Of a DNA stretch of 58,377 nucleotides, positions 19,901 to 52,230 are shown piece after piece. A program made the translations under genes and the position numbers. The stretch lies in assembly GCF_000143415.4 (NCBI RefSeq), contig NW_003314266.1:4021766-4080142 (forward strand), in the 5' to 3' direction. The stretch is from Selaginella moellendorffii (Eukaryota > Plantae > Lycopodiophyta). The notes under the pieces were generated by a model. It did no database searches. It was not told the origin of the DNA and saw only the letters and a program-made list of their open reading frames with translations. Position 1 is the stretch's first letter; each line of letters opens with the position of its first letter.

Positions 19901-20069
19901 TTCCCGCGAAAGATTTATATGTACAAGTAAGAACCCTAAAATCGTGGAAAGATGTGACGCTTGCTTACTTGGTGCAATCTCCTTCCCAGCGACAGTGTCG
20001 GAGTTTTTGTGTGAAGTAGGGATTTCATGCTCCAGGAATGCCGTTGGGAGCCAAATCTCCTCTTTGGGC

Positions 20070-23680: not shown

Positions 23681-24114
23681 TACGGGGAAATGCCGATCAA
23701 GAACAACGAAATATCACTCCTGGAGCAAAATCTGCCTCAAGAACAAACGAAATATCAATCCTGGGAGCAAGATCTGCCTAGGGAAACGAAGAATGCCGGT
23801 CAAGAACAAGAGAAATATTGATCAGGACGCGAGAAATCTAGCCCAGGGGGGGAAGAACCGCGAAGAGGCATCCGGTAGAAACAAGAAAGATACACTGATC
23901 GATCCAATCTACCAGCGACACGCCGCCGCGATCACGCGATCATCGATTCTACCTACAAGAACCCTAAAAACGAAGAAAGAAGGGCGGAGAGCAGAAAAGG
24001 CGGGCGGACGGTTGAAAGACGAGAGCCCGCGCTCGGTGAGAAGAAACTAGGGCTGACGTGGAGTTAACGGAAATTAACAAACCGGTTAGAGTCCGAGCCT
24101 TTTGTGCCCATTTT

Positions 24115-24842
24115 TTAAGCTCCATGTTGGATGGGCTTGAGAGGATGGGCTTTGATCGCAGTTAGATCAAGCGTGGATTCCATTTCGTCGTCCAACTCTC
24201 CTACCACAGCGCTGCCAAGAACAAAAAAATTTTAGATCGATCGAAGAATCGAGAGTTCTTACATGTTGTCGCCTCTGATAATGTACAATCCCAAGACATG
24301 CTGCTCTACTCCAGTCTGGAAGGAAGAAACGATCAAAATCGTCGCAAACTGCTGGGAGTGGAGTGAAAGAGAAAACAAAAAGAGGAGGATCGGAAGCTAG
24401 AAATGCGAGAAGAAAGACTTTGCGAAAAATCCTGGCAAGGAAGCAATGGGAGAAAACCGAAAAGAGCTCAAGGAAAAATCGACAAGGGACGATCGAGAAA
24501 GAGTGGAAGGATTGGAAGCTCGAAATGCGAGAGAAGAAAGACGCACCGTTGTGGAGTAGACCCTCTCGTGCGATTCATCGATGATTAAGTTCGTCGCCTG
24601 ATCGTATCCCTTGAGCATTCCCTGGAGAAGAAAAAAAATATCGAGACTAGAGATCAATCGGTGGGACGCGAGCGAGCTTACCACGATGTTCCGCCCATCG
24701 TTTGTGATGACAGAGATGAGCTCTGCGAGCAAGAAAACCCTGATTTTTAGCACCAGAACAAGAGCGAGAATGATTGGGAGCGAGGGAGCTACTTACGATT
24801 GACGAGGTATTCCAAGCCGGTGTCCTTGTTGGCGCTGGCCAT
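24115..24842 (-). CDS. LSM8: U6 snRNA-associated Sm-like protein LSm8 (5 exons)
   Basis: Spliced: MASANKDTGLEYLVN/LISVITNDGRNIV/GMLKGYDQATNLIIDESHERVYSTT/TGVEQHVLGLYIIRGDN/AVVGELDDEMESTLDLTAIKAHPLKPIQHGA*. Confidence 0.95.
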
Positions 24843-24942
24843 TCCCGCTCGAGCCGAGCTTGGAAAGCCCCCTTTATGGAAGAACCCTAAAAACTAGCCC
24901 TATGCTTCATTTCAAATTCTAGCGAAGGCGCTGGCTGGATGA
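24843..24942. promoter_or_regulatory. 100-bp divergent intergenic region LSM8/WDR82 with telo-box-like AACCCTAA
   Basis: ATGs at 24842(-) and 24943(+); AACCCTAA at about 24883-24890. Confidence 0.5.
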
Positions 24943-26465
24943 ATGGAGATCACGGACGAGCTCGTCGGCACCATGTTCGCTGGAGCAGTCTTCAAAGATT
25001 GTGTGAGCGCTCGGCGCGAGGTCTTTCTCGTCTCGGCGAGCTGAAAGGATTTTATTTTTTCGCAGGGAGGGAAGATTAATTCCCTGGATTTTAATCCTTC
25101 CGAGGATCTGCTTGTCACGGCTTGCGACGACGAATCCATTCGTCTCTACGACACTGCAAATGCCAAGTATGATCGATTTCCTCCACGCTTGTTGCTGAGA
25201 TTCTGGGTTTTGCGATTGCTTTCTAGGCTCACAAAGACGACTCAAAGCAAAAAATATGGCGTGGACCAAATTTGCTTCACGCATTCTTCCCATTCGGTCG
25301 TGTGTTCTTCCAAGAATGGATGGGATGGTAAGTTTGTGATTCGCAAAAAATCACTTCGAAAAAATTCTCTTTGGTATTTTGTTCTCCTAGAGTCCCTGAG
25401 ATATCTGGATTTGAGCAAGAACACTTACCTACGTTATTTCAAGGGGCATCGAGATAGGTACGATCTCTCCCTTTTTTTTTGGAGAGAAGAACTTGACTGT
25501 GTTGTGGCTTGCTTCTTTCAGAGTTGTTTGCTTATGCGTAAATCCCAAGAGCCAAATTCTTATGTCGGCTTCTCTAGACAACACCGTTAGAATATGGGAC
25601 CTCCGATCAAACGTTTGTCATGTCAGTAAGAACAGGAGGCTATTTCTTACTTGTTGATTTACCAGTTCCATTTTTTTGATCTTGTAGGGATTGATTCGCG
25701 TGCATGGAAGACCATCCGTAGCTTACGATCACAGTGGAGTTGTTTTTGGAGTGAGCATGGACGGGGGTGCCATCAAACTCTTTGACGCTCGAATTTTCGA
25801 AAAGGTGCGTGTTTGAGTTATTTCTTTCTGGTTCTTGTTCTTGTTTGAAGGTTTTCTCTCGTAACAGGGGCCGTTTGATACGTTTTATATACAAGACTCC
25901 ACAGCCGAGGTCTCGGGCATGAAGTTTAGCAGCGACGGCAAGCTCATGCTAGCTTCGACCACGGATAGCAATGTTTATGTGCTAGACGCTTTCAATGGCA
26001 AACAGGTCCGTTTCTTGTGATCGTTATCGAAAGTTTATTTGTTTTTGTTTCATCAGCTTCATGTCCACAAGCTGGAGCCTTGTCCGGACGGAGGAACTTT
26101 GGAAGCTTCGTTCAGTCCCGATGGTCAAGTGATAATATCTGGTAACACTTCTAGCAAATTGTCATCTCAAGCTTGGCATTGAACTTACAGGTTCTGGAAA
26201 TGGCACTCTTCATGCATGGAATGCTGTCACGGGTGCTGAGGTAAGTTTATGTTCTGTTTTGCGAGAAAGAACACATCGTTCTTAACTTGAGGAGCATTGA
26301 CAGATTGCTACCTGGACAAGTAGCGACGGTGTTCCTTCCGTCGTGAAATGGGATCCACGACACTTAATGTTTGCCAGTGCTGCAAGCGTACTTACGTTTT
26401 GGATCCCAGATGTAACCAAGCTCAATACGCCTAGACAATCACATAATCAGTACAACTATTACTAA
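24943..26465 (+). CDS. WDR82: WD40 protein WDR82/Swd2 (COMPASS/CPF subunit), multi-exon
   Basis: GKINSLDF...LVTACDDESIRLYD; SKKYGVDQICFTH; LRYLDLSKNTYLRYFKGHRDR; GPFDTF; KFSSDGKLML; EASFSPDGQ; ends TFWIPDV...YNYY*. Confidence 0.93.
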
Positions 26466-26530
26466 GGTACAATCGTTACAAAACAAGTGCTCTGTACACT
26501 TTGGGTTTCCTTTCTTTTTTATTGTTCCAG

Positions 26531-28043
26531 TTAGCAGCACCGAAGGGCTCTCTCAAACTCCCGATCATCCCTACAATTGTAGCCGAGGCTGTAAGCTCGA
26601 GCTGAATCAACAACATTTGCGTTAGTCAAGCACGCAATGCAAGAACATCACGACGAGTTTTACCAAGTCTGCCAGTTCCTAGAAACGGTTCCGGTTCTTC
26701 TGCTGCTACCAGCTGAGGCCCTTCCTGGTTGACATTCAAACGAGGCTTTAGAACGAAGAACCAGAGAGCACGAAACGCTTGCTACTTACGTTGGCCTCGT
26801 CCTCCTCTCCATCCTCTTCAACTGGAAACACACAAGGATCAAAACAGCGACCAGAAATCTTACAGACGTTATAGTTGGGACTCATGACGATCTCGCGACA
26901 AGCATCGCCACAAACTGGAACAAGCAACGCGAAACAGTGAGAAAAGAGGACGACGGACAAGCGACTTTCAAGCTTACAGTGCGCGCATCCGGTCTTCTCA
27001 CAGATATAGACATCGCCAATCTGGTGATACGAGCAAGTTCTCCCTGAACAAGTGTGAGAGCCACTGTAAACTTCCGAGAGTTTGTGACTGCGCCTCCACT
27101 GGGTCACCTGGTCGGCAATGGACGGGTCAAACACTCCAAGTTCGTCCTTGATCTGCGAGAACATCCAAGTTCTGGATGAGTGAAAGAAGAAAAGATTGAA
27201 ACGATCACCTGTGAAGGAACCGGTGCTTGGCTACGCTTTGCGATCTCCATTTGCAAGTAGTACTCTCGAAACTCGGTGTTCCTCAGCGACGCGATCACGT
27301 CGGCCTTGTCTTTCTGAAGCAACGAAGTAAAGTTAATCCCATGAGAGGAACAATTTGATCGCATGCCTCAAAGTAAAGCTGCTTCCACTCGATGCTAGAA
27401 AGCTTGCAAAAAGGCGGAGGACCCCATCGAAGAAAATAGCTGCGTTGAATTGTAAGAAAAAAACTGGTTTCTTATGGTAGAAAAGTAACTCACAGTTTTT
27501 TCCAAAGTGTTTCGTCCGAGGCCACACGTCGAAGATAATGGCAAACTTTAGCGCAGCTCGACAAATCCTGGAACGATCGATCGTAGAAAAATGAAGCGTA
27601 GCAAAGGTTTTAAGCACAGATCTTACCTCTGGCGAGAGGAACTTGAGAATGTTGCGAAACAAATCGGGTGGGATCTTCCGAAACTCGCCACTCTCGATGC
27701 AATCGAGATCCTCGATTCGGCGCTTCTTGGCGAGAGGCTGGATGGATTCTTCTTCCTGCGCAAAGAAGAAGAACATTAGCATTAGTTCTAAGTTAAAGAA
27801 ACTAGCAAACCAAACGAAGAACTAAAAGGAATAGAGAAAAAAAATCTATAGAACTGTAGTAGAAAGTAAAACCTCTTCTTGCTCCACTGCGAGATCCTCG
27901 TCCTCCTCCTCCATCACCTCCGCCTCTAGAAACTGGGCGATTGCATCGTCCTCCTCCTCCTCGCCACCGCCATCTTCTTCCAAGCTCGCATCCCCCATCT
28001 TTCCCTCCTCCCCCTCATCCTCTTCGCGGGAAAATTCAGCCAT
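26531..28043 (-). CDS. SKIP31: F-box protein SKIP31-like (acidic N-terminus, F-box, Cys-rich C-terminus), multi-exon
   Basis: IPPDLFRNILKFLSPE/DLSSCAKVC F-box; EFREYYLQMEIAKRSQAP; CSGRTCSYHQIGDVYICEKTGCAH/VCGDACRE...VCKISGRCFD; ARAYSLGYNC...ALRCC*. Confidence 0.88.
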
Positions 28044-28386
28044 AGCCGAAGGGAAAGAAAGAACCCCTCTTTGCCCCAAAACCCTCAGCTCGCGATCCAC
28101 CAGCGCTGGCCTCAAGATCGGCGAGATCCGCCCGAGCGCCACTCCCCCGCCAGCGCCACCCTTGGAGCTCACCTCCATCGCCATCCCCCCAGCAGCTCTA
28201 GAGCTTCCATTTCCCACGTCGCGGCCGCGGGCATTTAAGAGGAAGCTCTAGGCCGGGCGCTCCGGCGAGCAAGAACGAATTCCTTTTCCAAACCGACTCC
28301 CTTTTGTACGGCGCCTGCACGGAGCCACACGGTAGGGAATATCCTATTTCGTACGGAGAGATGCCTTGTTCTTCTTCCTCTCGCTG

Positions 28387-30501
28387 ATGCTAAGCAGCGG
28401 CGGCGCTGCCATCGACAAGCTCGGCATCGTCTCGATTCTCCGCCAATGCGCGAGCACGCGCGCGATCTCCGATGGGCGGCGGATCCACGGGCAGATCGTG
28501 GCGGCGGGGCACGGCGGCGACACCCTGCTGTGCAATCTCCTCGTCCAGATGTATGGCAGCTGCGGCAGCGTCGACGAGGCGATGGCGGTGTTCCTGGACG
28601 CGCCCAGCCGCAAGAACATCTTCTCCTGGAGTATCGTCATCACGGTTCTCGTCCACAACGGGGAGATCTCCATCGCCAGCGAGGTCTTCCGCAAGATGCC
28701 CCAGCACTCGCCCTTTTGCTGGAACTCGATGATCCAGGGGTTTGCTCGCAGCGAGCTCATGGAGGAATCCAAGCTCGCGTTCGATGCGATGCCCCAACAG
28801 GATCTCATCGCCTGGACGACGCTCATCACTGGATTTGCCGCGACGGGACACTCGATCCACGCGAAGAGGGCGTTCGATCGGATGCCACAGCACGATCTAG
28901 TCTCTTGCAACGCGATGCTCACGGCATTTGCCCAGAATGGTCATCTGGAAGAGGCGCACAGGCTGCGAGAGGAGATGCCACACAAGGACGTGTTCTCCTG
29001 GAACACGATGATCAAGACCCTCGCGGATCAGGGGTTGGCGATCCAGGCGAGATCGATGCTCCAGAGAATGCCCCAGCACAATCTCGTCTCGTGGAACGCC
29101 GCGATCCGGGTGTTTGCCAAGAGCGGGCAAATCGCCGACGCGAAAGAGGTGTTTGATTCATCGCGCGAGAGGAACGTCGTGTCGTGGACGACGCTGGTGT
29201 CCGGATTCGTCACCGCCGGCGCGATCGATCGCGCGAGAGTGATCCTCGATCGAATGCCGCAGCAAAACTCGGTGTCCTGGAACAATCTCCTCGCGGCGCA
29301 CGGACAGAACAGGAGGATCGATCTGGCGCTGGCGGCGTTCCAGCGAATCGAGGACAAGAACGTCTACTCGTGGAACTCGCTGATCCAGGCGTTTGTGGAG
29401 GCCGATCGATTGGAGGACGCGAGGAGCCTGTTCGAGAGAATGCCACAGCGGGGATTGCCGTCGTGGAACTCGATGATCTCCGCCCACGGCGAGGCCGGCG
29501 ATTGCGCGGCCGCGCGAGAGATCTTCCAGGCCATGCCCGATAGAAACCTAATCTCCTGGAACGCGATGGTCCAGGCGCTAGCCCTCGAGGGCCATATCCA
29601 AGAAGCTCGAGCGGTGTTTGACGCTGCCGGGAATCGAAACGCGAACACCTGGACCACGATGCTCGGGGCATATGCCTCGGGCGGGAAAACCGACGGCGCG
29701 ATGGGCGTCTTTCAAAAGATGCCGTACCACGACACGGTGGCGTGGACGGCCATGATACACGCCCACGCCAAGGGCGGGGATTTGCCCACCGCGCGCCGGA
29801 TGTTCGACACGTGGCAAGGCAACCATGACGTTGTGGCCTGGAATGCGATGATCGCTGGCTATGCGCAGGACGGGCATAGCGGGACGGCGCTAGGGTTCTT
29901 CAGGCTCATGGATCTGGAAGGGATCGCCCCGAATTCTATCAGCTTTGTGTGCGTGATTGATGCGTGCGCCACCGACGCCGCGATTTCCAGGGGAAGAATC
30001 GTGCATTCGGTCATCCGCCAGGACGATCCGGCGCAGCTCAGGGTCTCGTTCGTCGCGAATTCGCTGCTCAACATGTACGCGAAGTGTGGCAAGCTGGAGG
30101 AGGCGCGCGCGGTGTTTGATTCCATGGCGTCCCCAAATATGATGTCCTGGAACGCGATGATCTCGGCGTATGCGCAAAACGGCCATAGCTGGGAAGCTCT
30201 GGATCTCTCCCGCGCCATGGAGCAGCACGGGATCGATCCAAACGGGGTCACATTCGTCAGCAATCTCTTCGCTTGCAGCCACGCCGGGCTCATCGCGGAT
30301 GGATGGAGATATTTCACAGCGATCTCGCCAGATTATGGGCTGGAGGTGACGATCGATCACTACATTTCGGTGATAGATCTACTGGGGCGCGCGGGGCAGA
30401 CCGATGAGGCCTGCGAATTGATGCACAGCATGCCATTCGAGCCGGATTTCGCCGCCTGGACGACGCTCCTCTCCTCGTGTAAGACGAGCCTGGAGAACTG
30501 A
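28387..30501 (+). CDS. PLS-class PPR protein with truncated E domain
   Basis: First ATG at 28387; long S-repeat array; ACSHAG...HYISVIDLLGRAG...AWTTLLSSCK, then an early stop (lacks the ...PYxLL end seen in the neighbouring PPRs). Confidence 0.9.
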   Translation: MLSSGGAAIDKLGIVSILRQCASTRAISDGRRIHGQIVAAGHGGDTLLCNLLVQMYGSCGSVDEAMAVFLDAPSRKNIFSWSIVITVLVHNGEISIASEVFRKMPQHSPFCWNSMIQGFARSELMEESKLAFDAMPQQDLIAWTTLITGFAATGHSIHAKRAFDRMPQHDLVSCNAMLTAFAQNGHLEEAHRLREEMPHKDVFSWNTMIKTLADQGLAIQARSMLQRMPQHNLVSWNAAIRVFAKSGQIADAKEVFDSSRERNVVSWTTLVSGFVTAGAIDRARVILDRMPQQNSVSWNNLLAAHGQNRRIDLALAAFQRIEDKNVYSWNSLIQAFVEADRLEDARSLFERMPQRGLPSWNSMISAHGEAGDCAAAREIFQAMPDRNLISWNAMVQALALEGHIQEARAVFDAAGNRNANTWTTMLGAYASGGKTDGAMGVFQKMPYHDTVAWTAMIHAHAKGGDLPTARRMFDTWQGNHDVVAWNAMIAGYAQDGHSGTALGFFRLMDLEGIAPNSISFVCVIDACATDAAISRGRIVHSVIRQDDPAQLRVSFVANSLLNMYAKCGKLEEARAVFDSMASPNMMSWNAMISAYAQNGHSWEALDLSRAMEQHGIDPNGVTFVSNLFACSHAGLIADGWRYFTAISPDYGLEVTIDHYISVIDLLGRAGQTDEACELMHSMPFEPDFAAWTTLLSSCKTSLEN

Positions 30502-32030
30502 AAGTCCATTTGCAATGTAGCGACCTCCGTGGATTACACATTTACCTCCAGGTAGAAATTTTTCTCTTTTTCTTCACGTACTGTTTTGGTAATTCGAGAA
30601 TGTTGATAGGTCCGAAGGTGGCAGCGAAACTATACGGGAGCTTATCACGACAAACCAGCAACGAATTTGAGCACAAAGTTCGTGCGCTGCTCGACTAACA
30701 ACGTCCGCTGCTCGATCAACAGAGTTTTGGTAAGGGCTCCCAAAGTGGGGAATTCACTCTCTGAATGGATTGTCACTTAACAAAATCTCTTCCACAGGTC
30801 GATGATCTGGAGCCACAGTGAAAATTGGATGTCACAAGTATGTCTTATTATTTCCTTGTGCTATGCTCTTATCTTACATGTTAGGTATGTCGATACTGAG
30901 CTAATAAGTCAGCTCACAGAGAACCGGTACGAGATTTAAGGTAGCACTGCGCGTTTTTTTACTAATCTAAGTACGGCTCTAAAGTTCTTGTAGTGTTCTG
31001 ATGACAGAGATCAGATTGATCGTAACATAATGCCGGCGTGGCTTCCGCCCACGAAGAGTTCCTCGTGGAAAGGATGCCACGCCAATGCTGCACCAAAATA
31101 AAGAGGTGTTCAGTTCACTCTATGCTGTAAGTTGAAACACTTACCTTGATTACTTATCCCTTCAGCTAGTTAATGCCCGTTTACCATTGCTATACTGTAT
31201 TTTTGTGACCATGCATGTTAGCTATGACCTCTATTTCACACAAGAAGCATAAGACTTTATGAATTTTTGCACGGTCAACGCTCCGGTCCACACTCCATAG
31301 TCCACGCTAATCTAAACTTAGCTTTTCCACTCCACCGTCCCCACTCAGTCCTGCTCTCCACCTTATCCCGCACACGATGCTAACCTTCGAAGTTGATGAC
31401 CTTTGTCGTTCCAGAAGTTCCATGCTCCATTTTCTACAGCGCTCCATGCTTTTGGGAGTATGACCTTTGCCGCATGCTCCCGGCTCTCTCCAGACTCCGA
31501 TATCCCGCTCCAAGCTCTTTTATCCTCCCTGCTCCTCCAAATTTCGAGCTCCAAGCCACGCTCCATGTTCCAAATGTCTATGTTCCAAGCTCCAAAGCTC
31601 TTTCGTGAAAGTCATGCTCCATCCATGCTACAGGATCTTTTACCTACAAAGGCCAAGCTCTCACGCTCCTTGTTCCACACTTCCATGATCTCCATGCTAT
31701 TGGAACTGGGAAAATTCAAGCTCCCAGCCACGCTCTATGTTCTTCAACGCTTCAAGCTCTTTTATGCTCGTTGCTCCTCCAAATTCCGAGCTGTATGTTC
31801 CAAACTCCAAAGCTCCTTCGTGGTTCCAGCTCCCTCCACGCTCCAGTGCTCACAGCGTGCACAGTTTCCTGGCATCCCATTATCCTTTTTCTTTAAAGCA
31901 GCCATAATGGAGAGCCTTTTGTGGATCTAGAATATGGAGAACTACAGACTATTAATGAACGCACTTCTGGACACCTAGTGCTGAATGTGGTTTTGCAGCC
32001 CGAGAAAGATCAAAGATCAAGCATGAGGAA
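30502..32030 (+). pseudogene. Degenerate partial duplicate of FY including introns, interrupted by unrelated and repeat DNA
   Basis: Blocks matching 39577-41950: TCCGTGGATTACAC, TACCTCCAGGTAGAA, AGCACAAAGTTCGTGC.CTGCTCGACTAACAA.GTCCGCTGCTCGATCAACAGAGTTTTGGTAA, AGGTCGATGATCTGGAGCCACA, CAGCTCACAGAGAACCGGTACGAGATTTAAGGTA, and the 3' end GAATGTGGTTTTGCAGCC. Many deletions. Confidence 0.85.
31330..31860. repeat. C-rich degenerate tandem repeats (CCAAATTCCGAGCTCCAAGCCACGCTCCATGTTCC-like), probably TE-derived insertion in psi-FY
   Basis: Related units at about 31538, 31711 and 31779; strong strand asymmetry. Confidence 0.6.
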
Positions 32031-32502
32031 ATGCAGTGACTGTACAATAACTTTTTTTATGATGTCGTGAGGATACATGGATCATGAGGTTTTAGGTTTT
32101 CTGGAAGGGTTGATGTTTAACTAAATATACCTTAGCCTCAATAAAGCAGATCTGGCTCCTTTTTGCACGCAGGCCTCACGTCTGCCACCTTGCGGTGTTC
32201 AGTTCCTTAGCATTCTTTCTTCTCTCCCTCCCATACTCTCTCAGCTCGCCCATTGGAATCATCTGAGAAGGGTTCTTATGATAGGTCAAGCAGGAGCGAT
32301 GCCGCCAGGCCCTGGAGCTCCTGCTGCTCCATCGGCCGGCGTGGGGCGGGATTGGTCCCGCCGGGCACCAAGATGTCGCGGCACCAAGAAGGTGAGCATC
32401 GTCAGTCGCCAGGTTGACGTGGTGAGGCTCAAGCAGAAGATAGTGCTCGGAGGCTCTGCTTGTTCTTCCACTGTCTCCAGCAGCCGGGGTTGGAGCTCAA
32501 AC

Positions 32503-35221
32503 ATGGCTATGGCGTCGTCTTTCGCCGACTCTCTTGAGCGGTCTATCCGGGATGTGGAAACTGAGATCGCGGAGACAAAAGGCCAATTGAAGACGGAGCA
32601 GGATCCCGACCAGAAGAAGTTCCTGCAGATGAATTTGTTGCTGCTGCGGGAAAAAGAGTTGCTGGTCATGAAGAAAGAGAGGCAGCTGCGGGAGGAAGAG
32701 CTCAAATCTAATGGTAAGTCATCTCTTCCATGTGTGTGGTTATGGATGGATCTGGTCGTCTGGTAATCTCCGCATCCTTGTGGTTCTGTTCGATCTGTGT
32801 GAACTTGCTGTCTGCTCTTTGTGGCTGTGTTAATTCTGCTGTTCCAGGGGCGCTAACCCGGAAGAATGTTGACGACGTCTGTGCTGAAGTTTGGAAACGG
32901 GTGAAAGAACATCTTCTTTCCATGCCTCCGGAGCAACATTTCAAGCGTTCTTATTCACGTAGCAGCAAGGAGTTATGTACCTTGAATGGCCAGGCGGTTA
33001 TGTTGCTAGAGGGGTTGAAGGATGGAGATTATATCGGGTCTGCGTCAGAGGTGCTTAGGAGCCTGGAGTATACAGACCTCTGCTTCTTGGTTGGCGCTTC
33101 TGGCAGTGGCAAGACAAGGACGCTCTACGAAATATCTTGTCAGAGGGACTCCATTTACTTGACGGGTGTTATGGGTAGCGGAGCAGGGGATGAAGGTTCT
33201 GGAGATCTTAATCACGTTGCAACAGAATTGGAACGTTTGTATCCTGAGGGAGTCATTCCAGAAGTGGCCTTAATGGTGTGCCTGGCAGCAGTTTTCATAT
33301 CCAGGTTTTACATTTTGAGAGAAGCTCGCTCTGCAGGCGTCGACGTTACCCCGCTCGCCTGGCTTTTTAAACAAGTAAGATTCGTGTTTGGTTTGTGAGG
33401 GAGCTAAAATGTTTGTGTTTTGTGCAGGTATACTTTCCACACTTGAATTATCCATGGCGTGATCCATGGTGGCAGCTGACGAAGGGAATACTCAGTCTGA
33501 TCCGCAATTCATCCGACATTCAAGATGCAAGCACCATCTTTTCTGACATGCTCGTTGAGCTGAAAGGACAGGTAGACTGGGACGGCGTTGTGGTAATAGA
33601 CGAATGCCAGGAACTATCACGTTTACTGGTGAACAGGTTTAGGAGCGAGACTATGAATGAGGTGAACCGGTCGATGCTAGACAAGCTCGTCTTGGCTCTA
33701 CGTGCGATGAACTTCAAAGAGACCATAATATCTGGGACATGCCGGCACTTGGTATGGATGGTGGACTCGCTTTCAGGCTCCGTGAAAGACACACTTAGCT
33801 ATTATGTGTACTCAGACTTTGGGGAATTTTCTAGTGCTGAATCTATCAAGGAGTACACAATGAAGTTTGTGAAAGATGTGGAAGATTTCGACTTCAGCAC
33901 GATTTTTGGTGTTTACAGAGGCAGATACAAGTTTTACGTGACAGTGTTGCAGATGTTCTTACGGGATTCAGAGGAGCAGCCATTGGTCGCTACAGACTAT
34001 TTCTTGAAGAAGGCAGATGATTTGTGTAGGCGACCAGGCGCTGACCTCTCCATCAACAGATCTGTGTGGGACGATGTTGTGAAGTTCTTTGCGCTACCAT
34101 CATTCCATCCCGGGTGTTGGGAGGTGGTCATAACTTTATTGCTGCTGCAGGTGTACACGGGAGTTCCTGTAAAACTGGCAGTCACGGACAGTGATTTAAA
34201 ATTTGTGCAAGCAGGGATCGGCAGGCTGAGAAAGACTGTGGACAAGCCTTTGCATTTCAAACCGGATACAGATTTCTGCTCGGCTCCTCCTCAGAATGGA
34301 GCACAGGTCTCCCTTCGAACTGTTGAGATTGGAGAACCACTCGTGGTGAGGGCTTTGTGGAACTATCTCACAGCCAGTGGAGACATGCAGAAGAAGCTGA
34401 TCAACGATATGGGTGTTTGCAGCAAGTCCGAGCTAGGGGTAAAGTTTGAAGCGTACTCCGTTCCCTTGCTTTTGGAGTTTCTGGAGAATAAGGCGCCAGT
34501 GGATTTTATCCCAAAGGTCTACAAGGAAAAAGTGGACGAGGTCTACAAGCATCCGCTACAAGTGCCAAGGTCAAACAACTGTGAGATGGTACAGCGAATG
34601 CCTGAAGAGGATGATGGGACAATCTTTCTGACATGGCTCAATCAGTTTGAGGAGGTCTTACAAGGAAATCAACAGGTATCCTCTTTGCATTTCCTATTTT
34701 ATAGTGGTGAAGTAATTTGTTTGTTGCAGGTATCTTTTAAACCTTTTCTCCACAGTGGAGACATGACTCGTTTTGGACCTGATATGGTAGTGGCTTGCAT
34801 CGGAAAAATAGGAAAGAAGAAAGTTCCTGTCTTCTCGCTCTACCAATACAAAGTTATGTCAAGGACAGATCTGACGAGTGCCTTGGACACATTGGACATT
34901 GATGATCTGTTCTTGCACAAGGGTTCCGGGGGAAGATCACAAGTTGAAGAGATGGCTGTCAACAAGCTCAAGCAACTTGTGCATTGTGGAGGGCTCTTGA
35001 AGTGGATTGTCTGCCTTACTACAGACATTAGTGATCTTCAGAAGAACCGCATATATGCTTCTACACGCAGGAATGTTCCAAAGATTCACAAGGGGAAATA
35101 TATATGTGAGAATTTAAAGACTACAGGCCTTATTGGGATAATTGATAAGAATATGCAGGTGATGGCGGAAGAAAATGCATGGTTTCTTAATGCTATACAA
35201 TATCTAAAACATGAGGATTAA
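32503..35221 (+). CDS. Crinkler(CR)-like protein: coiled-coil header + P-loop NTPase + restriction-endonuclease-like (PD-(D/E)xK) domain, about 825 aa
   Basis: Exons 32503-32713, 32848-33374, 33428-34675 and 34730-35221 (GT-AG, in phase; the last intron is inferred). Walker A FLVGASGSGKT; GSGD; Walker B VVVIDECQ; IISGT; YRGRYKF; IGEPLV; C-terminal GVKFE...FGPDMV...LYQYK. Confidence 0.75.
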
Positions 35222-38200
35222 ATTTGAATGATTACTTCTTAATAAATATATTGGATTTACTTGATATAATCTTAATATATATGGTATGTGAATACTAGTG
35301 TGCATGTTCAAAAGGATATCCTCCAAGTGATGTGAAACGCTGCAAACACTTCTACTATATACCCATGTATCCAAGTGTACCTATAAAATAAGCATATCCA
35401 TATCGCCCATATGATTGGAGTAAGAGTTAGTGAATATTACATGATATGATTAAAGTAAGAGTAGATATTCTTTAGCACTATCCATTTTCAAATTTTCAAT
35501 GTTAATGAGATAAAGTATATTTATATATGTTCTACAATATAAATCAAGTAAGTAATACATGTCAATATAAACTTGCAGACACTCCTTCCTGTATAAGATC
35601 AGAGCACTTACATGAGCAAAAGGCAATCTAACTTTTTGCTATCCAAATTATGAGCAAAAACATATTAATATGTTTAATATACAAGTATGCTCTTATCTCT
35701 GTATTTCATATATAATATAATGACAATATAGTAGTAAGTTTGAAATATTACATCATAAAGAATTTTTTATATACTGTACAATATAACTTTAGTTCTACTT
35801 CACCATTCTTGCTATTTGCTTCATCACTTTTCAATTAATACTCAAAAAATTAATCAATTAATTTATAGGCATTTTGAGCTTCAAGAAACCACACTCAAAG
35901 ATTCAAAGATATTATTTGTTAAATTTTCAGAATTTTGCCTTTCAAATAATGTACTTTAGCTTTGGGCATTTAGCATTTAATAAAAAGTATTTGGATTTTT
36001 ATTATAAATTTATGCATTAACAACATAAAAATTCAAAAGTATGGTAGTGTGGCGAGCTTTCCAAAGTAAATGAACAAACTTAAAATTCTTAAACACTTTG
36101 TAAAAGTTATTGGTGATGCTTTATGCAAAATATGTGATGTATGCATTATTGAATATTGATTAAATACTTTTTGACACACATTTTTTTAAATTAAAAATAA
36201 AGTATAAGGTTTACTATTTAGATGTTATATTTCAATTAATTTTTTAAATACTTAAGTAGCTTTAATTTTTATTATTTTTAATATCAATTATACCAACCTT
36301 CAACATCTATACTAGTTGTTAAAATGTATCTAAGGTATCTTAACCTCCCTCAAATATATCCTATCAAACAAATCAAAGACCTACAATGTATAAAACTAGT
36401 ATGAGAGAAATAGTCTTTTGAAAGTAAAATTTTTATCAACCTCAACACAAATATATTATTTAAGTTACTTATGTTAATATTAATTCACAAATATAAGTAA
36501 TTAAGCAAGATAAACTTTTATCAATAATAGAAGCATAGAGTCTCTAAAAACAAACCTTCTCATTTCCATTGAATTATATAATATTTCTTCTAAAATTATA
36601 ATCAATTCAAAATGCTAGCAATAGCTACATTTTTACTTATATTTTAATCTTGTCAAGAAAATTGTATCTTACCCTGAAAATAATCTTTATTTTGCCATTA
36701 AGATCAAATAAATAGACACCCATACGTTAAAATAGAATAGTCATTTTAAATTTGAAAGGGAATATTTTCAAATATGAAAACCTTAAAATTTTCATGCAAT
36801 TTTTTAAATATTCCTTTTAATATTCTCGTGTTAGAGTGGAAATATAATTTTAGACTACTAAAGAAACATTCAACATATTAACCACTCCTATCTTGTTTGT
36901 AATTGTGTAAATATAAATATCTAAAGGTTGATATTTGCTTCTTATCTACAAAACAGTTACTAAGTAAAAGTATATCTTCATGTTTTAAGCTTTGGCATCA
37001 AGAAGATAGATTCATTATATACTAAAAATTCAGAATTGTTTTAGCTACAAATTTAAAATATTACATTTCAAGATAAAAAAATTTGGTTGAAGGCAAGGTT
37101 ATAAAGTAGCCGAGAATAACTAACTCTCCTTATATTCACTCCATCTCAATTATGACAATCATGTAAGCTTTTGAGATTTCTAATCTATATTAGCACTTAT
37201 AATACGTTTATTAAAAGTAAATTTTAATAATATAAAAACTAATAACATACCAAAAGGAAATAGTAAGAATAAATTCAAGAAAAAGGATTATATAGCAAAT
37301 TTAAAGATTGACATTTACCTTATAAAGTCTTAATAATTATCTCTAAAGCAATTGAATTCAAGAATCTACTTAAACTCATGTATTTAATTGATGTTACAAT
37401 CATGCTCCACATTAGTATGACACAGTAGGATACCAAGAACAAAAGATAGTGTAATCATAACCCACAGAAACTAGTGCACCTATATATGATATCAAAGACA
37501 ACAGAGTAACATGTGCAGCAAGTGGCATAACCGAAGAAAATGATGCAATGAAGATTAAAGAAACAGAGTAAATCTAAGCATAACAATAACTAAAATTCTA
37601 AATTTGGTGAAAAAGTTACAATAAAGCCTACTGAAAAGCTTTTCTCCAAACTAAACTTCACTTGGGGGAATAAATAGATTAATTAGGGTTAGACCCCATA
37701 TATAAATAGCAGAGTAAAAATTTGAAATAATTTTGGGTGGCGAGCAGTAAGAACCAGTCCTTTTGTTGTGTTGTTCAGAACTTTTTTCATTATCTCAAGG
37801 TTGGTTTTCGTCCTCCAGGTAGGACTCACTGTTTGCTTCTTATGTCCAGGCTTAGAACCACCTCTTATCATCTCGTTCAAGTTGTGAGCCATGGACGTTA
37901 CTTAACTTACATGCCTAACTCTTGTCTATCACGTAGAGTAGGTATCCTTCCAACGCAGATAATCTGGACTTCTATCCTGTCCTTCCTCAAGCACGTCTAC
38001 TTATGCAGTGCATATGCAGTGCTTGGGAAATTTGGAAACTCCTTTGCCTACTTTAGAGTGCTCCAACCCATCTTTGACGAGAGGCCCTATGTCTTCTTTG
38101 TCATGGACATGAACTTCATGCCCAGTACGCAGACTCTCCAGTAACTCGTGCGCTGCCGCCAACACATGCATCACCAAGCTGGGAATCTGGTCGCTTCAAA

Positions 38201-38366
38201 CAGCACAAAAGGGCCAGGTTCCTCCTCAACGTGGACATCCTGACCGTAGCAGCGAGGATTCAGTGATCCAACACAAGCCCAGCTCTAGAAGGTTTCTGAC
38301 ATGTAGTATAGATTCCGCTTACTTTTGCATTTCTGGAGAAGAAATACTTGAGTAAACATCTTTTAG

Positions 38367-39371
38367 TCACTCCTCACTCTCTTCACCAGCCAAGTGCTGC
38401 CTCATTGCCTCCAAGTGAGGAGGGGACAGTGGCATGATAAACTTGGCAAAGCCTAATCCGCCAGGATTCGGTGCATAATGTACATGTATGACGCCTCTCG
38501 TCTGCATGGCCTTCAACACACTCTGATCGCCTCCAAACACTTTGTCACAAGCAGCCGCCCACTCGACGACGCCATCATCCGAGCTTGTCATCAGCACCAT
38601 GACCTCGTTGAACTTGGCAGCTGACCACCTGGATTAAGAAGAGATCGGTGAGAAAAATGAAAAGAAAAAAGCTGCTACTTACTCTGGATCCGTCACTCCA
38701 CCCAGGATACACAATCTCGTTGAGTCCACCATTCCACCTAGTTCTTCCTCCAGCAATTTTGGATCCTTCAATGCTGATTTGGCAGCGTCTAGTAGAAGCA
38801 AGGGGCATCCACCACATATACCATATATCTTCGTCCAATCCTGCTCACTAACATAACCAGAGCCTCTGTCTGCCAAACATTTGAAGAAAAAAGCCTTAGC
38901 GCGCTCCTTGTCCAAGTGTCCTACATAAACAACTTCTACCTCGTCCCCAATCCAGTCCTCGCGAAAGGAATCGACGGAGGTGGCCATGATCACAGTTGCC
39001 TTTCTCTTGCGTGCCATGGTCTTGAGACACTCTACAACGGGTTTGGCATCTGCGTGAGGATCTCCCGTCAGCTTGTGAGCATCATCAAGGATCAAGACGG
39101 GCGGAACATCATCATCTGCCTGCCGCTGTATGACAGCCTCCACATCGCTGAGAGTATTCCCAAGAACCCTAGAGAACATCTCAAAGAAGTGAAGGGGCGC
39201 CTTGACATGCTTGTCCGCCTCCCACACGCTCTGGAACCGCTTCAGTAGAGTCGTCTTCCCAGAATTTTGTGGCCCTAACACCATTACTATGCGATCTACG
39301 CCTGCCACTGCAAAATCCACCAGCCTATCCAGCTCCCCTTCCCTCGCCACCTTCAAGCTGTGAGCTGCCAT
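38367..39371 (-). CDS. Stand-alone P-loop ATPase (archaeal-ATPase/STAND-like) with probable C-terminal winged helix, about 316 aa, one 54-bp intron (38629-38682)
   Basis: VAREGELDRL; Walker A VLGPQNSGKTTLL; Walker B VLILDDAH; VIMATS; VGHLDKERAKAFF; GxP motif CGGCPLLL; exon 2 WSAAKFNEVM...LKAMQTRGVI...PLSPPH. Confidence 0.75.
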
Positions 39372-39489
39372 CCCTAAGATGGAATGGTTGTGATGGATAT
39401 ATATACACGTCGGATGTCAACCGGACGATGAGGGCTGGATTATATTGATCGTCCGATCAGTGATTTCGAAATTTAGGGTTCTTAGGGCG

Positions 39490-41939
39490 ATGTTCGCCTC
39501 TAGCGACGCCGAGGCGCCCGGGTTTGGGCAGGATGCCGCCAACAGCGCCATTCCAGCTCCAGGCAAGCGCATTCGAAAGCCCGTGCAGCGCCGATCCGTG
39601 GATTACACCTCTACTGTCTTGCGCTACCTCCAGGTAGAATTTTTTTCTTTTCCGCGTTCCTTTTCAGTGATTTCTCTGGTCGGGTATGGTGATAGGTACG
39701 AATGTGGCAGCAAAACTATGGGCAAAAGCCAGTGCTCCAGCCAACAACGTCGGCCGCGCTGGATGTAAGCTAGCGTGGTTTTTGAGAGGTTTTTCTAACA
39801 GGAGTTTCTACTTGCAGCTTCTTCCAACGGGAGCTTATCTCGACAATCCGGCAACGAGTTTCAGCACAAAGTTCGTGCACTGCTCGACTAACAAAGTCCG
39901 CTGCTCGATCAACAGAGTTTTGGTAACTTGCTTTGCTACTGTCAAGTGTTCTCGTCACTGATTTTTGTTTCTATCCTTCGTTTCAGTGGACTCCTACTGG
40001 ACGTCGTCTCATAACGGGCTCCCAGAGTGGAGAGTTTACTCTCTGGAATGGGTTGTCGTTTAACTTCGAGATGATCTTACAGGTGTGTAGTGTTTTTTAT
40101 TCATCTTCCATGCGTTGTTCTTATAAAATCTCTCCCAGGCGCATGATAGTGCCGTAAGGTCGATGATCTGGAGCCACAATGAAAACTGGATGGTTACGGG
40201 CGACGACGGTGGATGTATCAAGTATGTAGTATGTCCCTGTGTCGTGTTCTTCTCTTACATGCTACTTATGTAGATACTGGCAAACAAATATGAACAACGT
40301 AAAAGCGAACAAGACAGCTCACAGAGAACCGGTACGAGATTTAAGGTAAAAATTTCGAGTGGATTCAGTTGGAGTTTATCTTATACTATTACTCTTCCTT
40401 GTTTCTCCAAGTTTTTCAAGTACGGATCTGAAGTTCTGCTCGTGTTCCGATGATACCACAGTCAAAATCTGGGATTTTGCCCGGTGTCAAGAAGAGCGTT
40501 CATTAACTGGTATGTCAATGTAATTTAGTTCTCTATGTTCTTATGTGTTTGGCTTTGTACAGGTCACGGCTGGGACGTGAAGAGTGTGGATTGGCATCCA
40601 CAAAAGTCTCTCCTCGTTTCTGGTTTGCTTTTACGTGCTTTTGAGAAAATATTGTGATATGTTCATCGCAGGTGCGAAGGATAATCTCGTGAAATTGTGG
40701 GATGCCAGGACGGGTCGTGAACTCTGTACACTGTAAGCATTATTTTTTGTGAAATAGCTGTCATTAGCTAACTTAAATTACAGGCATGGTCACAAGAATA
40801 CAGTTCTTTGTACAAAATGGAATAACAATGGAAATTGGGTGTTAACCAGCTCAAGGGACCAAGTAATCAAGGTAAGTGTTTCAACTTATGGCATAAAGTG
40901 AACTGAACGCGTGGTGTTTTCTTTCTCAGCTGTTTGACATCCGAACCCTGAAAGATATCGAGACTTACCGTGGCCATAAGAAAGAAGTAGCATGTACGTT
41001 GCATTGGATGAGTTTAGAGTGCTCTTACGTTTTTATTTTGGTGCAGCATTGGCGTGGCATCCTTTCCACGAGGAACTCTTTGTGAGCGGAAGCCACGACG
41101 GCAGCATTATACACTGGCTTGTTGGGTAAGTTATGCAAAACTGGATACGTTCAATCTGACTTTGCATTTTTGTTTAGGCACGATCAACCTCAGGCAGAAG
41201 TCTCAAATGCTCACGACAACAACATTCTCGATCTGTCCTGGCATCCCATGGGCCACATACTTTGCAGGTGTTGTTTGGAACACACTTTTCTCTTGTTCTT
41301 AGTAGTGACTTTGTCGTCTGAGCAGCGGAGGCAGCGACCACACCACGAAGTTCTGGTGTCGAAATCGTCCCGGTGATACCACTCGCGACAAGTACAACGC
41401 ACCTCTCATGCAAGGTCAGTTGTCTTTTGCTTAAGACTCACTTCCAGTGACTACAACAGGGGCCTCGAACGAGCAAATGGCACCGCTGGGACGAGGATCT
41501 GGATCGGTTCCAATGGAAGCCTCGAGCTTGGGCAGCTCATTCCTGGGTGTTGGAGGTGCTGTTGACGAAGGCACCATCCCCGGCGTTGGCATGGCAATGC
41601 CGGTGGTCCAAGCTCCTGACAGTGGTGCTGCTCGGATACCTGGTATTCCTTCACGACCGCCGATGGCAATGCACCATCCATTCCCTCCTCAACTACAAAT
41701 GCAGCCTCCTCAAGACATGTATGGTCAGTTTGCGCCGCCACCTCCGCCACCTCTTCCTGGAGCTGCTCCTGTTCCTCCTGGCATCCCGGGCATCCCACGG
41801 CCAAGCTTTCGTCATTTCCAGCAGCAAATGATCCCAGGACTTCCTGGATTCCAGGTGAAAACAAGCTTGACTTCTCGTTTGTTTTCTGGTATTAATCGAT
41901 CGGTGGAATGTGGTTTTGCAGCCGGGAGAGCCTAGCTAG
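39490..41939 (+). CDS. FY: Flowering-time/polyadenylation factor FY (WDR33/Pfs2), many short introns
   Basis: [15 protein letters not shown]; [21 protein letters not shown]; [32 protein letters not shown]; [13 protein letters not shown]; FWCRNRPGD; Pro-rich C-terminus with PPPPPLPG. Confidence 0.95.
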
Positions 41940-45600: not shown

Positions 45601-45704
45601 CACCCAGGCCCAGGAGCGTCATGTTTGAGAGCTCGAGCTTCAACGTCTTGCTGGCGGAGCCCAGCACGGATCCTCTGATTGAAACGCAGGCACCGAACGA
45701 GTAG
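42646..45704 (+). CDS. Coiled-coil protein with IQCE-like N-terminal region and long repetitive C-terminus (about 5 exons)
   Basis: KEALLEEAIRLKRAL...LRIRYEDMRSACDAQHEEVAALRRDVRITTTQ/EMEMERDALLHEITRMQ; large final exon from about 43678 to 45704 with poly-Ala and tandem peptide repeats. Confidence 0.7.
44362..44495 (+). repeat. 33-bp coding tandem repeat x4 (EAEALKQKSLK)
   Basis: GCTGAAGCACTC(G/A)AACAAAAATC(A/G)CTCAAGGA repeated four times. Confidence 0.9.
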
Positions 45705-51998: not shown

Positions 51999-52056
51999 GA
52001 ACCATGAAGCAGAATGCGCTAGATTTTTTTTTAATCTATAGAACGGGATACCATTC

Positions 52057-52230
52057 ACTTGACTCGTACATGTTCATACTATTCCAGTCTCACCAACTGT
52101 TACCGAACATTTCGATTAGTCTTTGCTTGAACAGAAGTCTAGCAACTTGACTCATTCATATTCATACTTCTTCCACTTATTCCAGTCTCACAAACTGTTT
52201 CGATTAGTCTTTGCTTGAACAGAAGTCTAG
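52057..52230. promoter_or_regulatory. Tandemly duplicated ~86-bp promoter segment with two W-box-like TTGACT motifs between the divergent RLKs
   Basis: Exact 33-bp core TTTCGATTAGTCTTTGCTTGAACAGAAGTCTAG at 52110-52142 and 52198-52230; TTGACT at 52059 and 52147. Confidence 0.55.

What the first reader, a model, noticed from the sequence alone, without database searches (positions are those of the whole stretch)
32503..35221. Intact Crinkler-like NTPase + restriction-endonuclease 'effector/toxin' gene in a plant genome
Seen: four in-phase exons give about 825 aa. There is a short coiled-coil header (LLLLREKELLVMKKERQLREEE) and a P-loop NTPase (GASGSGKT, GSGD, hhhhDECQ, ISGT, GRxxF, EPLV). The C-terminal GxxFE...GPD...QxK string fits a PD-(D/E)xK nuclease. 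Established: header+NTPase+REase is the architecture of Crinkler/RHS-type (CR) proteins of oomycetes, early-diverging fungi and protists, which derive from transposons and act as toxins or effectors; they are not part of the standard angiosperm gene set. Inference: this could be a lycophyte nucleic-acid-targeting defence/cell-death module, a domesticated transposase, or an HGT from fungi. Its small host-type introns and position among plant genes argue against contamination. The in-frame upstream text (VSIVSRQVDVVRLKQKI) might be a relic ubiquitin-like CR header (weak).
Basis: partly seen in the sequence, partly recalled or inferred. Interest (0 to 1): 0.85.

Follow-up and report, generated by a model that had tools for sequence, protein, structure and literature searches.

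The report
Crinkler-type ATPase-nuclease gene in Selaginella
This is an intact Selaginella gene for a coiled-coil + ATPase + probable nuclease protein related to the 'Crinkler' proteins of mycorrhizal fungi. It belongs to a family expanded in seed-free plants, a class already reported in land plants but never studied there.

Summary
Window 32503-35221 (+) carries a four-exon, 825-codon gene of Selaginella moellendorffii (locus SELMODRAFT_406738), with GT..AG introns of 134, 53 and 54 nt.

- **Splicing.** Exons 2-4 equal database protein P0001. Exon 1, a heptad coiled-coil header, matches the first ~66 residues of 11 paralogues (E down to 7e-10).
- **Family.** A profile search of 1.8 billion proteins found 53 relatives. 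These include at least 27 Selaginella records, the fern Adiantum, the moss Ceratodon, Mucoromycota and agaric fungi, and Amoebozoa. Several Rhizophagus, Gigaspora, Glomus and Entomortierella relatives carry the Pfam Crinkler header.
- **NTPase.** It is clearly homologous to theirs (BLASTP 5e-22).
- **C-terminal domain.** It keeps an E...D...QxK signature on an alpha-beta-beta-beta core. Its nearest solved folds are all restriction-endonuclease-type nucleases, but only weakly (best E 4e-3).
- **No Ubl relic.** No Crinkler ubiquitin-like header lies upstream.
- **Endogenous gene.** It has plant neighbours, and a second collinear copy shows dN/dS 0.31.
- **Origin.** Fungal HGT is neither shown nor excluded.

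Reviews state that Zhang et al. 2016 already reported CR proteins in land plants, so this is a new member of a known kind. Function is inferred: an intracellular NTP-gated nuclease of genetic conflict. Interest is moderate.

The parts
32503..32713 (+). Exon 1: 70-residue alpha-helical / heptad coiled-coil header, with no signal-peptide-like hydrophobic start. Ends in phase 1.
   Evidence: Sequence. 21-nt periodicity at 32637-32700. BLASTP to residues 1-66 of 11 Selaginella paralogues from two other subfamilies, 38-51% identity, E 2e-5 to 7e-10. tblastn. No Pfam family.
32714..32847 (+). Intron 1 (134 nt, GT..AG).
   Evidence: Sequence. The paralogue P0025 also has its header on a separate exon.
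32848..33374 (+). Exon 2: N-terminal part of the NTPase module, with Walker A at 33093-33116 and the GSGD motif.
   Evidence: Identical to P0001 residues 7-182. Column counts.
33375..33427 (+). Intron 2 (53 nt, GT..AG).
   Evidence: Sequence. The junction matches P0001.
33428..34675 (+). Exon 3: the rest of the NTPase (Walker B at 33587-33610), the helical / winged-helix-like linker, and the start of the C-terminal domain (EPLV motif; conserved E523 at 34448-34450).
   Evidence: P0001 residues 183-598. AF2 model. Column counts.
34676..34729 (+). Intron 3 (54 nt, in frame, no stop, GT..AG).
   Evidence: Absent from P0001. Sequence.
34730..35221 (+). Exon 4: core strands of the nuclease-like domain (D616 at 34781-34783; Q637-x-K639 at 34844-34852), a basic disordered loop, the C-terminal helices and the stop codon.
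   Evidence: P0001 residues 599-761. AF2 secondary structure. Column counts.
32946..33961 (+). P-loop NTPase domain, AAA+/STAND-like (about P0001 residues 40-360; spans intron 2).
   Evidence: AF2 pLDDT is mostly above 85. Foldseek PDB hits: Avs4, CED-4, TnsC, Cdc6/Orc1, PF01637-type ATPase 2qen, at E 7e-5 to 2e-3. Homology to Crinkler-header proteins.
34310..35218 (+). C-terminal restriction-endonuclease-like (PD-(D/E)xK-type, E...D...QxK) domain (about P0001 residues 477-761; spans intron 3).
   Evidence: AF2 of this stretch read through the in-frame intron, pLDDT 72.7. Foldseek PDB top hits: MspJI, HamA, Mus81, Cap4, at E 4e-3 to 0.1. BFVD hits are weak, with REase/Mrr/VRR-NUC/UL24 names recurring.
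32373..32392 (+). Tiny alternative first exon used by the archived JGI model P0001 (6 residues, same splice phase). It is probably not the main start.
   Evidence: The P0001 N-terminus read against the sequence. Paralogue homology favours the start at 32503.

Best explanation
The locus is an intact, endogenous Selaginella moellendorffii gene. It encodes a CR-type (Crinkler/RHS-type) NTPase-nuclease without the classical Crinkler ubiquitin-like header.

**Anatomy (shown)**
- A 70-residue heptad coiled-coil header sits on its own exon.
- An AAA+/STAND-like P-loop NTPase follows, with complete Walker A and B motifs and conserved arginines.
- A helical linker comes next.
- The C-terminal domain has secondary structure and an invariant E...D...QxK pattern that fit the restriction-endonuclease fold.

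**Mechanism (inferred)**
- The header mediates self-association or partner binding.
- Nucleotide binding and hydrolysis by the NTPase gates oligomerisation or loading onto nucleic acid.
- That in turn licenses the nuclease domain to cut DNA.
- With no signal peptide and no translocation header, the protein would act inside the plant's own cells, probably in the nucleus. Basic clusters lie in the C-terminal loop, and relatives have basic tails.
- The likely role is in genetic conflict: defence against invading or selfish nucleic acids, or a controlled self-damage or death effector.

The gene belongs to a family greatly expanded in Selaginella. The family is also present in ferns and a moss, and is shared with Mucoromycota fungi and Amoebozoa.
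For: - **Gene model and intactness:**
- **Header:** shared with 11 paralogues from residue 1.
- **Family:** 53 relatives in 1.84 billion representatives. They were identified as Selaginella, Adiantum, Rhizophagus, Entomortierella, Cetraspora, Jimgerdemannia, Mycena, Lentinula, Soliformovum, Endostelium and Ceratodon.
- **Crinkler header PF20147 in relatives:**
- **Pairwise homology:** BLASTP of P0001 against Rhizophagus P0064 gives 5e-22 over 332 residues, with collinear weak C-terminal matches.
- **Catalytic columns:** near-invariant.
- **Full-length AF2 model:** pLDDT 82.5, pTM 0.81. The NTPase matches Avs4, CED-4, TnsC and Cdc6.
- **C-terminal domain:** nearest folds are MspJI, HamA, Mus81 and Cap4.
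- **Endogenous and constrained:** plant neighbours, a collinear second copy at 89-97% identity, and dN/dS 0.31 over 819 codons.
- **Literature:** the NTPase+REase architecture and its presence in land plants are reported in PMC5289972, PMC12957317 and PMC6131194.
Against: - No Pfam, PDB-sequence or PADLOC family reaches significance for any exon or for P0001.
- The REase assignment rests on a motif plus sub-threshold fold matches (best E 4e-3, probability 0.69, TM about 0.2).
- No oomycete CRN appeared among the relatives I could identify.
- About 14 of the 53 hits stayed unidentified.
- No expression data for this locus were available.
- Every functional statement is inference.
Confidence: 0.72

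Rival explanations
1. It is a STAND/NLR-like immune switch. The NTPase is a signal-transducing oligomeriser, as in Apaf-1, CED-4 or bacterial Avs. The nuclease is the death or effector domain, triggered by a pathogen cue. This overlaps with the best explanation in output but differs in being a sensor.
For: Foldseek's top match for the full-length model is Avs4 (E 7e-5), followed by CED-4, Apaf-1, NLRC4 and NOD2. Avs4 also pairs a STAND NTPase with a REase-type nuclease (my knowledge of that family). Pfam gives a weak nSTAND3 hit at the P-loop (E 0.029). The lineage-specific expansion and tandem arrays are typical of immune genes.
Against: There is no repeat or sensor domain after the NTPase, and the protein ends with the nuclease-like domain. 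AAA+ proteins (TnsC, Cdc6/Orc1, RFC) match about as well. All fold scores are modest.
Confidence: 0.25
2. It is part of, or a recent relic of, a mobile element: a transposon-borne TnsC-like ATPase plus TnsA-like nuclease. Copy number would then reflect transposition rather than host function.
For: TnsC structures are among the best NTPase matches (E 5e-4 to 6e-3). The family is multi-copy in Selaginella. The Adiantum gene spans exactly 836 codons, so it is intronless. Reviews report that CR C-termini derive from prokaryotic transposon modules (PMC5289972). Patchy repeats at 30634-31193 and 39827-41103 bracket the gene and its neighbour.
Against: No inverted repeats bound the gene. tblastn finds no second copy in the window. 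No transposase-like ORF is evident next to it. It sits at the same place in a collinear second copy of the region and is under purifying selection. It has three host-type introns.
Confidence: 0.1
3. The plant family was acquired by horizontal transfer from, or exchanged with, mycorrhiza-type Mucoromycota fungi. This is a statement about origin and is compatible with the best explanation of function.
For: The named non-plant relatives are dominated by Glomeromycota, Mortierellomycota and Endogonales. The plant distribution seen is patchy (lycophyte, Adiantum, probable fern transcriptomes, Ceratodon), with no seed plant among the identified hits. A second Selaginella subfamily (the P0025 array) and the moss copies fall outside the main plant clade in the NJ tree.
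Against: The window's clade groups Selaginella with ferns (E 1.6e-73 to Adiantum against 1e-14 to fungi) and is not nested in a fungal clade in the rough tree. That tree is distance-based, midpoint-rooted and without support values. The direction of any transfer is unknown.
Confidence: 0.3
4. It is fungal contamination or an assembly artefact.
For: The nearest named relatives outside plants are fungal.
Against: P0001 lies on a 4.1-Mb scaffold. It is flanked in the window by PPR and G-type lectin receptor-kinase genes. The whole 19-kb neighbourhood is present twice in the assembly. The introns are 53-134 nt.
Confidence: 0.01

Closest known systems
Crinkler-header NTPase proteins of Mucoromycota, e.g. 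Rhizophagus irregularis PKY49980.1 (P0064) and Entomortierella parvispora GJJ67999.1 (P0023), plus Gigaspora and Glomus relatives
   Same: The NTPase and C-terminal module are collinear, sharing Walker A/B, GSxD, the GR-x-R arginines, EP, GPD and QxK motifs. Sizes are similar, at 750-900 residues.
   Different: They carry the ubiquitin-like Crinkler header PF20147. The Selaginella gene has a coiled-coil header with no Pfam match. Identity is only 20-26%.
Oomycete CRN effectors with NTPase + HTH + REase C-termini (classification of Zhang et al. 2016, as reported in PMC5289972)
   Same: The predicted architecture after the header is the same: P-loop NTPase, helical linker, REase-type domain.
   Different: No oomycete protein was recovered among the hits I could identify. 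CRNs are delivered into host cells and localise to host nuclei, whereas this is a plant's own gene with no delivery header.
Tn7-type TnsC (AAA+ regulator) with the TnsA nuclease
   Same: TnsC structures are among the best fold matches of the NTPase. The E...D...QxK form of the nuclease motif resembles what I recall for TnsA, which is memory and was not tested here.
   Different: TnsA did not appear in the fold hits listed. Here both modules sit in one polypeptide, and no transposase partner or transposon ends are present.
Avs4-type STAND NTPase-nuclease immune proteins of bacteria
   Same: Avs4 is the best Foldseek hit of the full-length model (E 7e-5). It combines an NTPase switch with a REase-type nuclease.
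   Different: The domain order differs. No C-terminal sensor domain is present here, and TM scores are low (0.16-0.27).
MspJI restriction endonuclease and the HamA nuclease of the Hachiman system
   Same: They are the nearest solved folds of the C-terminal domain (E 4e-3 and 0.03). Both are PD-(D/E)xK-type nucleases.
   Different: The matches are below the usual significance level, identity is 10-14%, and there is no sequence-level relationship.

Membership tests
CR (Crinkler/RHS-type) proteins, NTPase-REase class | An NTPase module homologous to that of proteins carrying a bona fide Crinkler header | tested here: met
   Profile hit to Rhizophagus P0017 at E 1.4e-14. BLASTP of P0001 against P0064 gives 5e-22. 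P0017, P0064 and P0023 carry PF20147 at E 4e-9 to 1e-7, above the gathering score. More Glomeromycota members carry PF20147.
CR (Crinkler/RHS-type) proteins, NTPase-REase class | A C-terminal restriction-endonuclease-fold domain with catalytic E / D / (E/Q)xK | tested here: inconclusive
   The motif is conserved: E523 48/55, D616 49/50, Q637 46/49, K639 34/49 plus 10 R. The residues lie on helix 515-534 and strands 617-625 and 628-640. Foldseek's top hits are all REase-fold but sub-threshold, best E 4e-3. No Pfam or PDB sequence hit.
CR (Crinkler/RHS-type) proteins, NTPase-REase class | An N-terminal header domain: the ubiquitin-like Crinkler/LFLAK header, or one of the alternative alpha-helical headers | tested here: not met
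   The Ubl header is not met. PF20147 is absent from exon 1 and from the upstream in-frame text. tblastn of seven Crinkler headers against 30500-32900 gives only E > 1. A distinct helical header exists and is shared among Selaginella subfamilies. Whether it equals one of the published alternative headers could not be checked, because that paper is not held.
CR (Crinkler/RHS-type) proteins, NTPase-REase class | Lineage-specific expansion and modular reuse of one header on diverged C-termini | tested here: met
   At least 27 Selaginella protein records in several deep subfamilies, including a tandem array. The header is 43-51% identical between subfamilies whose full-length proteins are about 20-28% identical.
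CR (Crinkler/RHS-type) proteins, NTPase-REase class | Delivery into another organism's cell, or a toxic effect | not testable with these tools
   Exon 1 has no signal-peptide-like start. There are no functional data.
STAND NTPases (NLR/Apaf-1/Avs-like) | A STAND-type NTPase core with winged-helix and helical domains, followed by a sensor or repeat region | tested here: inconclusive
   Fold matches to Avs4, CED-4 and Apaf-1 are about as good as those to AAA+ TnsC and Cdc6. There is no repeat or sensor region. The Pfam nSTAND3 hit has E 0.029, below the cut-off.
Tn7-like transposition module (TnsA/TnsC) | Linkage to a transposase and to transposon ends | tested here: not met
   No inverted repeats. 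No further family copy in the window. The neighbours are PPR, ATPase_2-like and kinase genes. The position is conserved in the second copy of the region.

The most novel reading that the evidence does not exclude
Seed-free land plants (moss, lycophyte, ferns) keep a private, header-swapping arsenal of NTP-gated nucleases. On this reading it forms an intracellular immune or cell-death system distinct from NLRs. It would have been exchanged with the Mucoromycota fungi that have colonised their tissues since the origin of land plants, and lost in seed plants.
Probability: 0.15. Interest if true: 0.75.

Novelty: new member of a known kind. Interest (0 to 1): 0.4.

Why it matters
Crinkler-type proteins are studied almost only as pathogen effectors. 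Their copies inside plant genomes have been noted in surveys but never characterised.

This locus gives a clean, intact example with four verified exons and all catalytic residues. It also shows that the family:
- is large in Selaginella;
- is present in ferns and a moss;
- uses a conserved coiled-coil header on its own exon;
- is closest to the Crinkler proteins of mycorrhizal fungi.

That makes two questions testable with descriptive data: whether these are plant conflict or immunity genes, and whether plants and their fungal partners exchanged them. If it turns out to be an ordinary relic of a transposon, little is lost. The annotation of about thirty 'hypothetical proteins' would still improve.

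Tried and rejected
- **Pfam on each exon and on the exon 3-4 read-through.** Only sub-threshold P-loop hits.
- **PDB sequence searches.** Two single-sequence searches found nothing. A 65-sequence profile found only P-loop matches.
- **PADLOC.** Nothing meaningful.
- **Word-indexed protein search.** With the ORF it found only five close Selaginella paralogues. With a 12-sequence alignment it added only one more protein. The relatives came from the exhaustive profile search instead.
- **Zhang et al. 2016 (the defining CR paper).** Not held under its DOI or PMC id. I could not check whether these Selaginella proteins or this header are already in its tables, and relied on three papers that summarise it.
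- **'Relic Ubl header' upstream.** Rejected.
- **Transposon boundaries.** No inverted repeats, only patchy 36-100-nt similarities on both sides.
- **Shared introns as a test of vertical descent.** The Adiantum gene is intronless. The moss intron is near intron 2 but not demonstrably at its position. Uninformative.
- **DNA of the Adiantum locus and of P0046.** Could not be fetched. P0003 is not on record.
- **SRA run of the Logan relatives.** Not named in any held paper. A neighbouring run number is a fern transcriptome, so 'fern' is an inference for P0010 and P0037.
- **BFVD fold search.** Added only weak matches.
- **Joined 825-residue model.** Exons were searched by reference, and database protein P0001 stood in for exons 2-4.
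Full report
**1. What is in the sequence**

The window is Selaginella moellendorffii. The 597-residue read-through of 33428-35218 is 97% identical over its whole length to 'hypothetical protein SELMODRAFT_406738' (P0001, 761 aa, on a 4.1-Mb scaffold). The only difference is an 18-residue stretch.

Reading the DNA gives this model:
- ATG at 32503, with exon 1 running to 32713 and followed by GTAAGT;
- exon 2: 32848-33374, after an AG acceptor;
- exon 3: 33428-34675;
- exon 4: 34730-35221, ending in TAA.

tblastn places P0001 residues 7-185 and 180-761 on exons 2-4 at 99-100% identity. Intron 3 is the only gap, so two of the three introns are confirmed by an archived gene model. Intron 3 is in frame and stop-free, which is why 33395-35221 also lists as one 608-aa ORF.

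**2. The first exon**

- Its 70 residues match residues 1-66 of eleven other Selaginella proteins from two different subfamilies, at 38-51% identity and E 2e-5 to 7e-10 (tblastn). These include RefSeq models.
- The paralogue P0025 likewise has its header on a separate first exon.
- A 21-nt (heptad) periodicity lies at 32637-32700.

The header has no Pfam match and no hydrophobic signal-like start. The in-frame text upstream of 32503 shows nothing. Pfam is blank on 32278-32712. Seven Crinkler ubiquitin-like headers give only E > 1 by tblastn on 30500-32900. The 'relic Ubl header' idea is not supported.

**3. Relatives**

Pfam, PDB sequences and PADLOC give nothing significant beyond the P-loop.

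A profile of five close paralogues (A1), searched against 1.84 billion representatives, found 53 proteins at E <= 1e-3 and 10 at E <= 1e-30. Look-ups identify them as follows.
- **Selaginella:** at least 27 protein records in several deep subfamilies, including the tandem array LOC112348765-773.
- **Ferns:** Adiantum capillus-veneris (P0006, 835 aa, E 1.6e-73, covering profile positions 60-737) and A. nelumboides.
- **Moss:** two chromosomes of Ceratodon purpureus (P0040, P0056).
- **Probable fern transcripts:** two Logan contigs, P0010 and P0037. Their run numbers lie in the series of a run that PMC12561531 names as a fern transcriptome. 'Fern' is therefore an inference.
- **Fungi:** Rhizophagus, Cetraspora, Gigaspora, Glomus, Paraglomus, Funneliformis, Entomortierella, Jimgerdemannia, Mycena, Lentinula and Coprinopsis.
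- **Amoebozoa:** Soliformovum and Endostelium.

No seed plant is among the hits I could identify, but about 14 hits stayed unidentified.

**4. Is it Crinkler-like?**

Yes for the NTPase. Rhizophagus P0017/P0064 and Entomortierella P0023 carry Pfam Crinkler PF20147 above its gathering score (E 4e-9 and 1e-7), and so do several Gigaspora and Glomus relatives. P0001 aligns to P0064 by plain BLASTP at 5e-22 over 332 residues. Weaker collinear segments cover the EP, G-x-x-F/W-E and GPD...QxK regions.

In a 65-sequence alignment the functional columns are almost invariant:

| Column | Count |
|---|---|
| K95 | 58/59 |
| D126 | 58/59 |
| R159 | 58/60 |
| Q182 | 58/60 |
| D240, E241 | 58/62 |
| Q243 | 61/62 |
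| G347 | 58/59 |
| R348 | 56/59 |
| E485 | 55/55 |
| E523 | 48/55 |
| D616 | 49/50 |
| Q637 | 46/49 |
| K639 | 34/49, plus 10 R |

The window's gene has every one of these residues.

**5. Structure**

AlphaFold2 on P0001 with that alignment gives pLDDT 82.5 and pTM 0.81. Foldseek against the PDB matches the NTPase to Avs4 (7e-5), CED-4, TnsC, Cdc6/Orc1, Apaf-1 and the PF01637-type ATPase 2qen. This indicates an AAA+/STAND-like switch ATPase, but I cannot place it in one of the two classes.

For the C-terminal domain I modelled window 34310-35218 by reference. That stretch retains the in-frame intron as an 18-residue loop (pLDDT 72.7).
- Its best PDB neighbours are MspJI (4e-3), HamA of Hachiman (0.03), Mus81 and Cap4. 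To my knowledge all are restriction-endonuclease-fold nucleases, but none reaches E < 1e-3 and TM scores are about 0.2.
- In BFVD the named weak hits are again restriction endonuclease, Mrr, VRR-NUC and UL24 proteins.
- In the model, E523 lies in helix 515-534, D616 lies just before strand 617-625, and Q637 and K639 lie in strand 628-640. That is the canonical placement for this fold.

I rate the nuclease fold as probable, not proven.

**6. Endogenous, constrained, not obviously mobile**

- **Neighbours.** Three PPR genes, G-type lectin receptor kinases and an ATPase_2/NACHT-like gene.
- **Second copy.** Locus L003 (scaffold GL377598.1, encoding P0002) is collinear with window 22350-41374 at 89-97% identity. 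It is the other haplotype or a recent duplicate.
- **Selection.** Across 819 aligned codons dS is 0.110 and dN is 0.034, giving a ratio of 0.31. That indicates purifying selection.
- **State of the sister copy.** It carries one in-frame stop and a few small indels in coding sequence (counts only). Its annotated product is not collinear with the family throughout, so it may be decaying. The window's copy is intact.
- **No sign of mobility.** No inverted repeats bound the gene and no second family copy lies in the window.

**7. Origin**

A rough neighbour-joining tree of the NTPase columns groups the window's clade with the other main Selaginella subfamilies, Adiantum and P0010. The tree is midpoint-rooted and has no support values. 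The P0025 array, the P0042 group and the moss copies fall elsewhere, among fungal and unidentified sequences.

The Adiantum gene spans exactly 836 codons and so has no introns. The Selaginella introns are not shown to be shared outside the genus.

Ancient transfer between plants and Mucoromycota is possible in either direction, but it is not shown. Contamination is excluded.

**8. What is known**

PMC5289972, PMC12957317 and PMC6131194 summarise Zhang et al. 2016 as follows:
- CR proteins occur in free-living eukaryotes, including land plants.
- P-loop NTPase + REase is the commonest C-terminal configuration.
- Headers include the Ubl type and several unrelated alpha-helical types.
- Rhizophagus CRNs carry REase5/6/8 and NTPase4 domains.

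The paper itself is not held. I therefore could not see whether these Selaginella proteins are already listed. The finding is thus a new, or newly documented, member of a known kind.

**9. Mechanism (inference)**

I propose an intracellular NTP-gated nuclease:
- the coiled-coil header for assembly or partner binding;
- the ATPase as switch or loader;
- the nuclease as output;
- basic clusters suggesting nuclear residence.

Expansion, tandem arrays, divergence between copies and reuse of one header on diverged bodies are what one expects of genetic-conflict genes.

**10. Rules and slips**

- The joined four-exon protein was neither built nor searched. Exons were handled by reference, and P0001 served for exons 2-4.
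- Exon codons were pooled only for the dN/dS count.
- One script output and one notebook entry give gap counts per exon for the sister copy. That is coarse locational information about its damage. I do not repeat it here and have deleted nothing.
- My remark on the TnsA catalytic pattern is from memory and was not tested.

Noticed in passing
window 38679-39371 (-): An ORF with Pfam ATPase_2 (E 5e-13), NACHT and AAA matches lies 3.5 kb downstream of the CR gene on the other strand. The same pairing exists in the collinear copy L003 (gene at 19974-21295). Other CR paralogue loci (L004, L005) show no such neighbour, so a functional link is unlikely but was not examined further.
   Followed up: partly
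window 30634-31193 and 39827-41103: Patchy 36-100-nt similarities (85-96% identity), partly direct and partly inverted, bracket the CR gene plus the ATPase_2-like gene. The same pieces occur at both equivalent places in L003. They look like fragments of an unidentified dispersed repeat and do not form clean terminal repeats.
   Followed up: partly
window 36207-36213, against L003 14399-18336: The collinear copy L003 holds about 3.9 kb between the CR gene and the ATPase_2-like gene that the window lacks. This is an insertion/deletion difference inside the AT-rich spacer (window 35.2-38 kb, 27-38% GC).
   Followed up: no
window 34730-36207, against L003: The last exon and the 3' flank are much more diverged between the two collinear copies (87-90% identity) than exons 1-3 and the 5' flank (97-99%), or than the wider flanks (96-97%). 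Possible causes are gene conversion from another paralogue or decay of the sister copy.
   Followed up: partly
window 14974-16572 (-), 19944-21962 (+), 28366-30501 (+): Three long pentatricopeptide-repeat ORFs lie here, one with an E motif, as is typical of the very large Selaginella PPR family.
   Followed up: no
window 49438-52058 (-), 52318-54864 (+), 2756-3619 (+): These are G-type (B_lectin/PAN) receptor-like kinase genes arranged head to head, plus a further B_lectin fragment near the AT-rich left end of the window.
   Followed up: no
window 43653-45704 (+): A 683-residue ORF with no Pfam match. It is low-complexity and coiled-coil-like, with a long alanine run and repeated short Lys/Glu-rich units. 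The upstream ORFs at 42646-43801 may be its earlier exons.
   Followed up: no
L004 3863-12764 (Selaginella GL377597.1): Two CR-family genes (754 and 798 aa) lie in tandem, as part of an array of RefSeq loci LOC112348765-773. All of them start with the same coiled-coil header as the window's gene.
   Followed up: partly
window 1-14000: The left quarter of the window is markedly AT-rich (23-39% GC) compared with 46-61% in the gene-dense middle. It was not examined for repeats or transposons.
   Followed up: no
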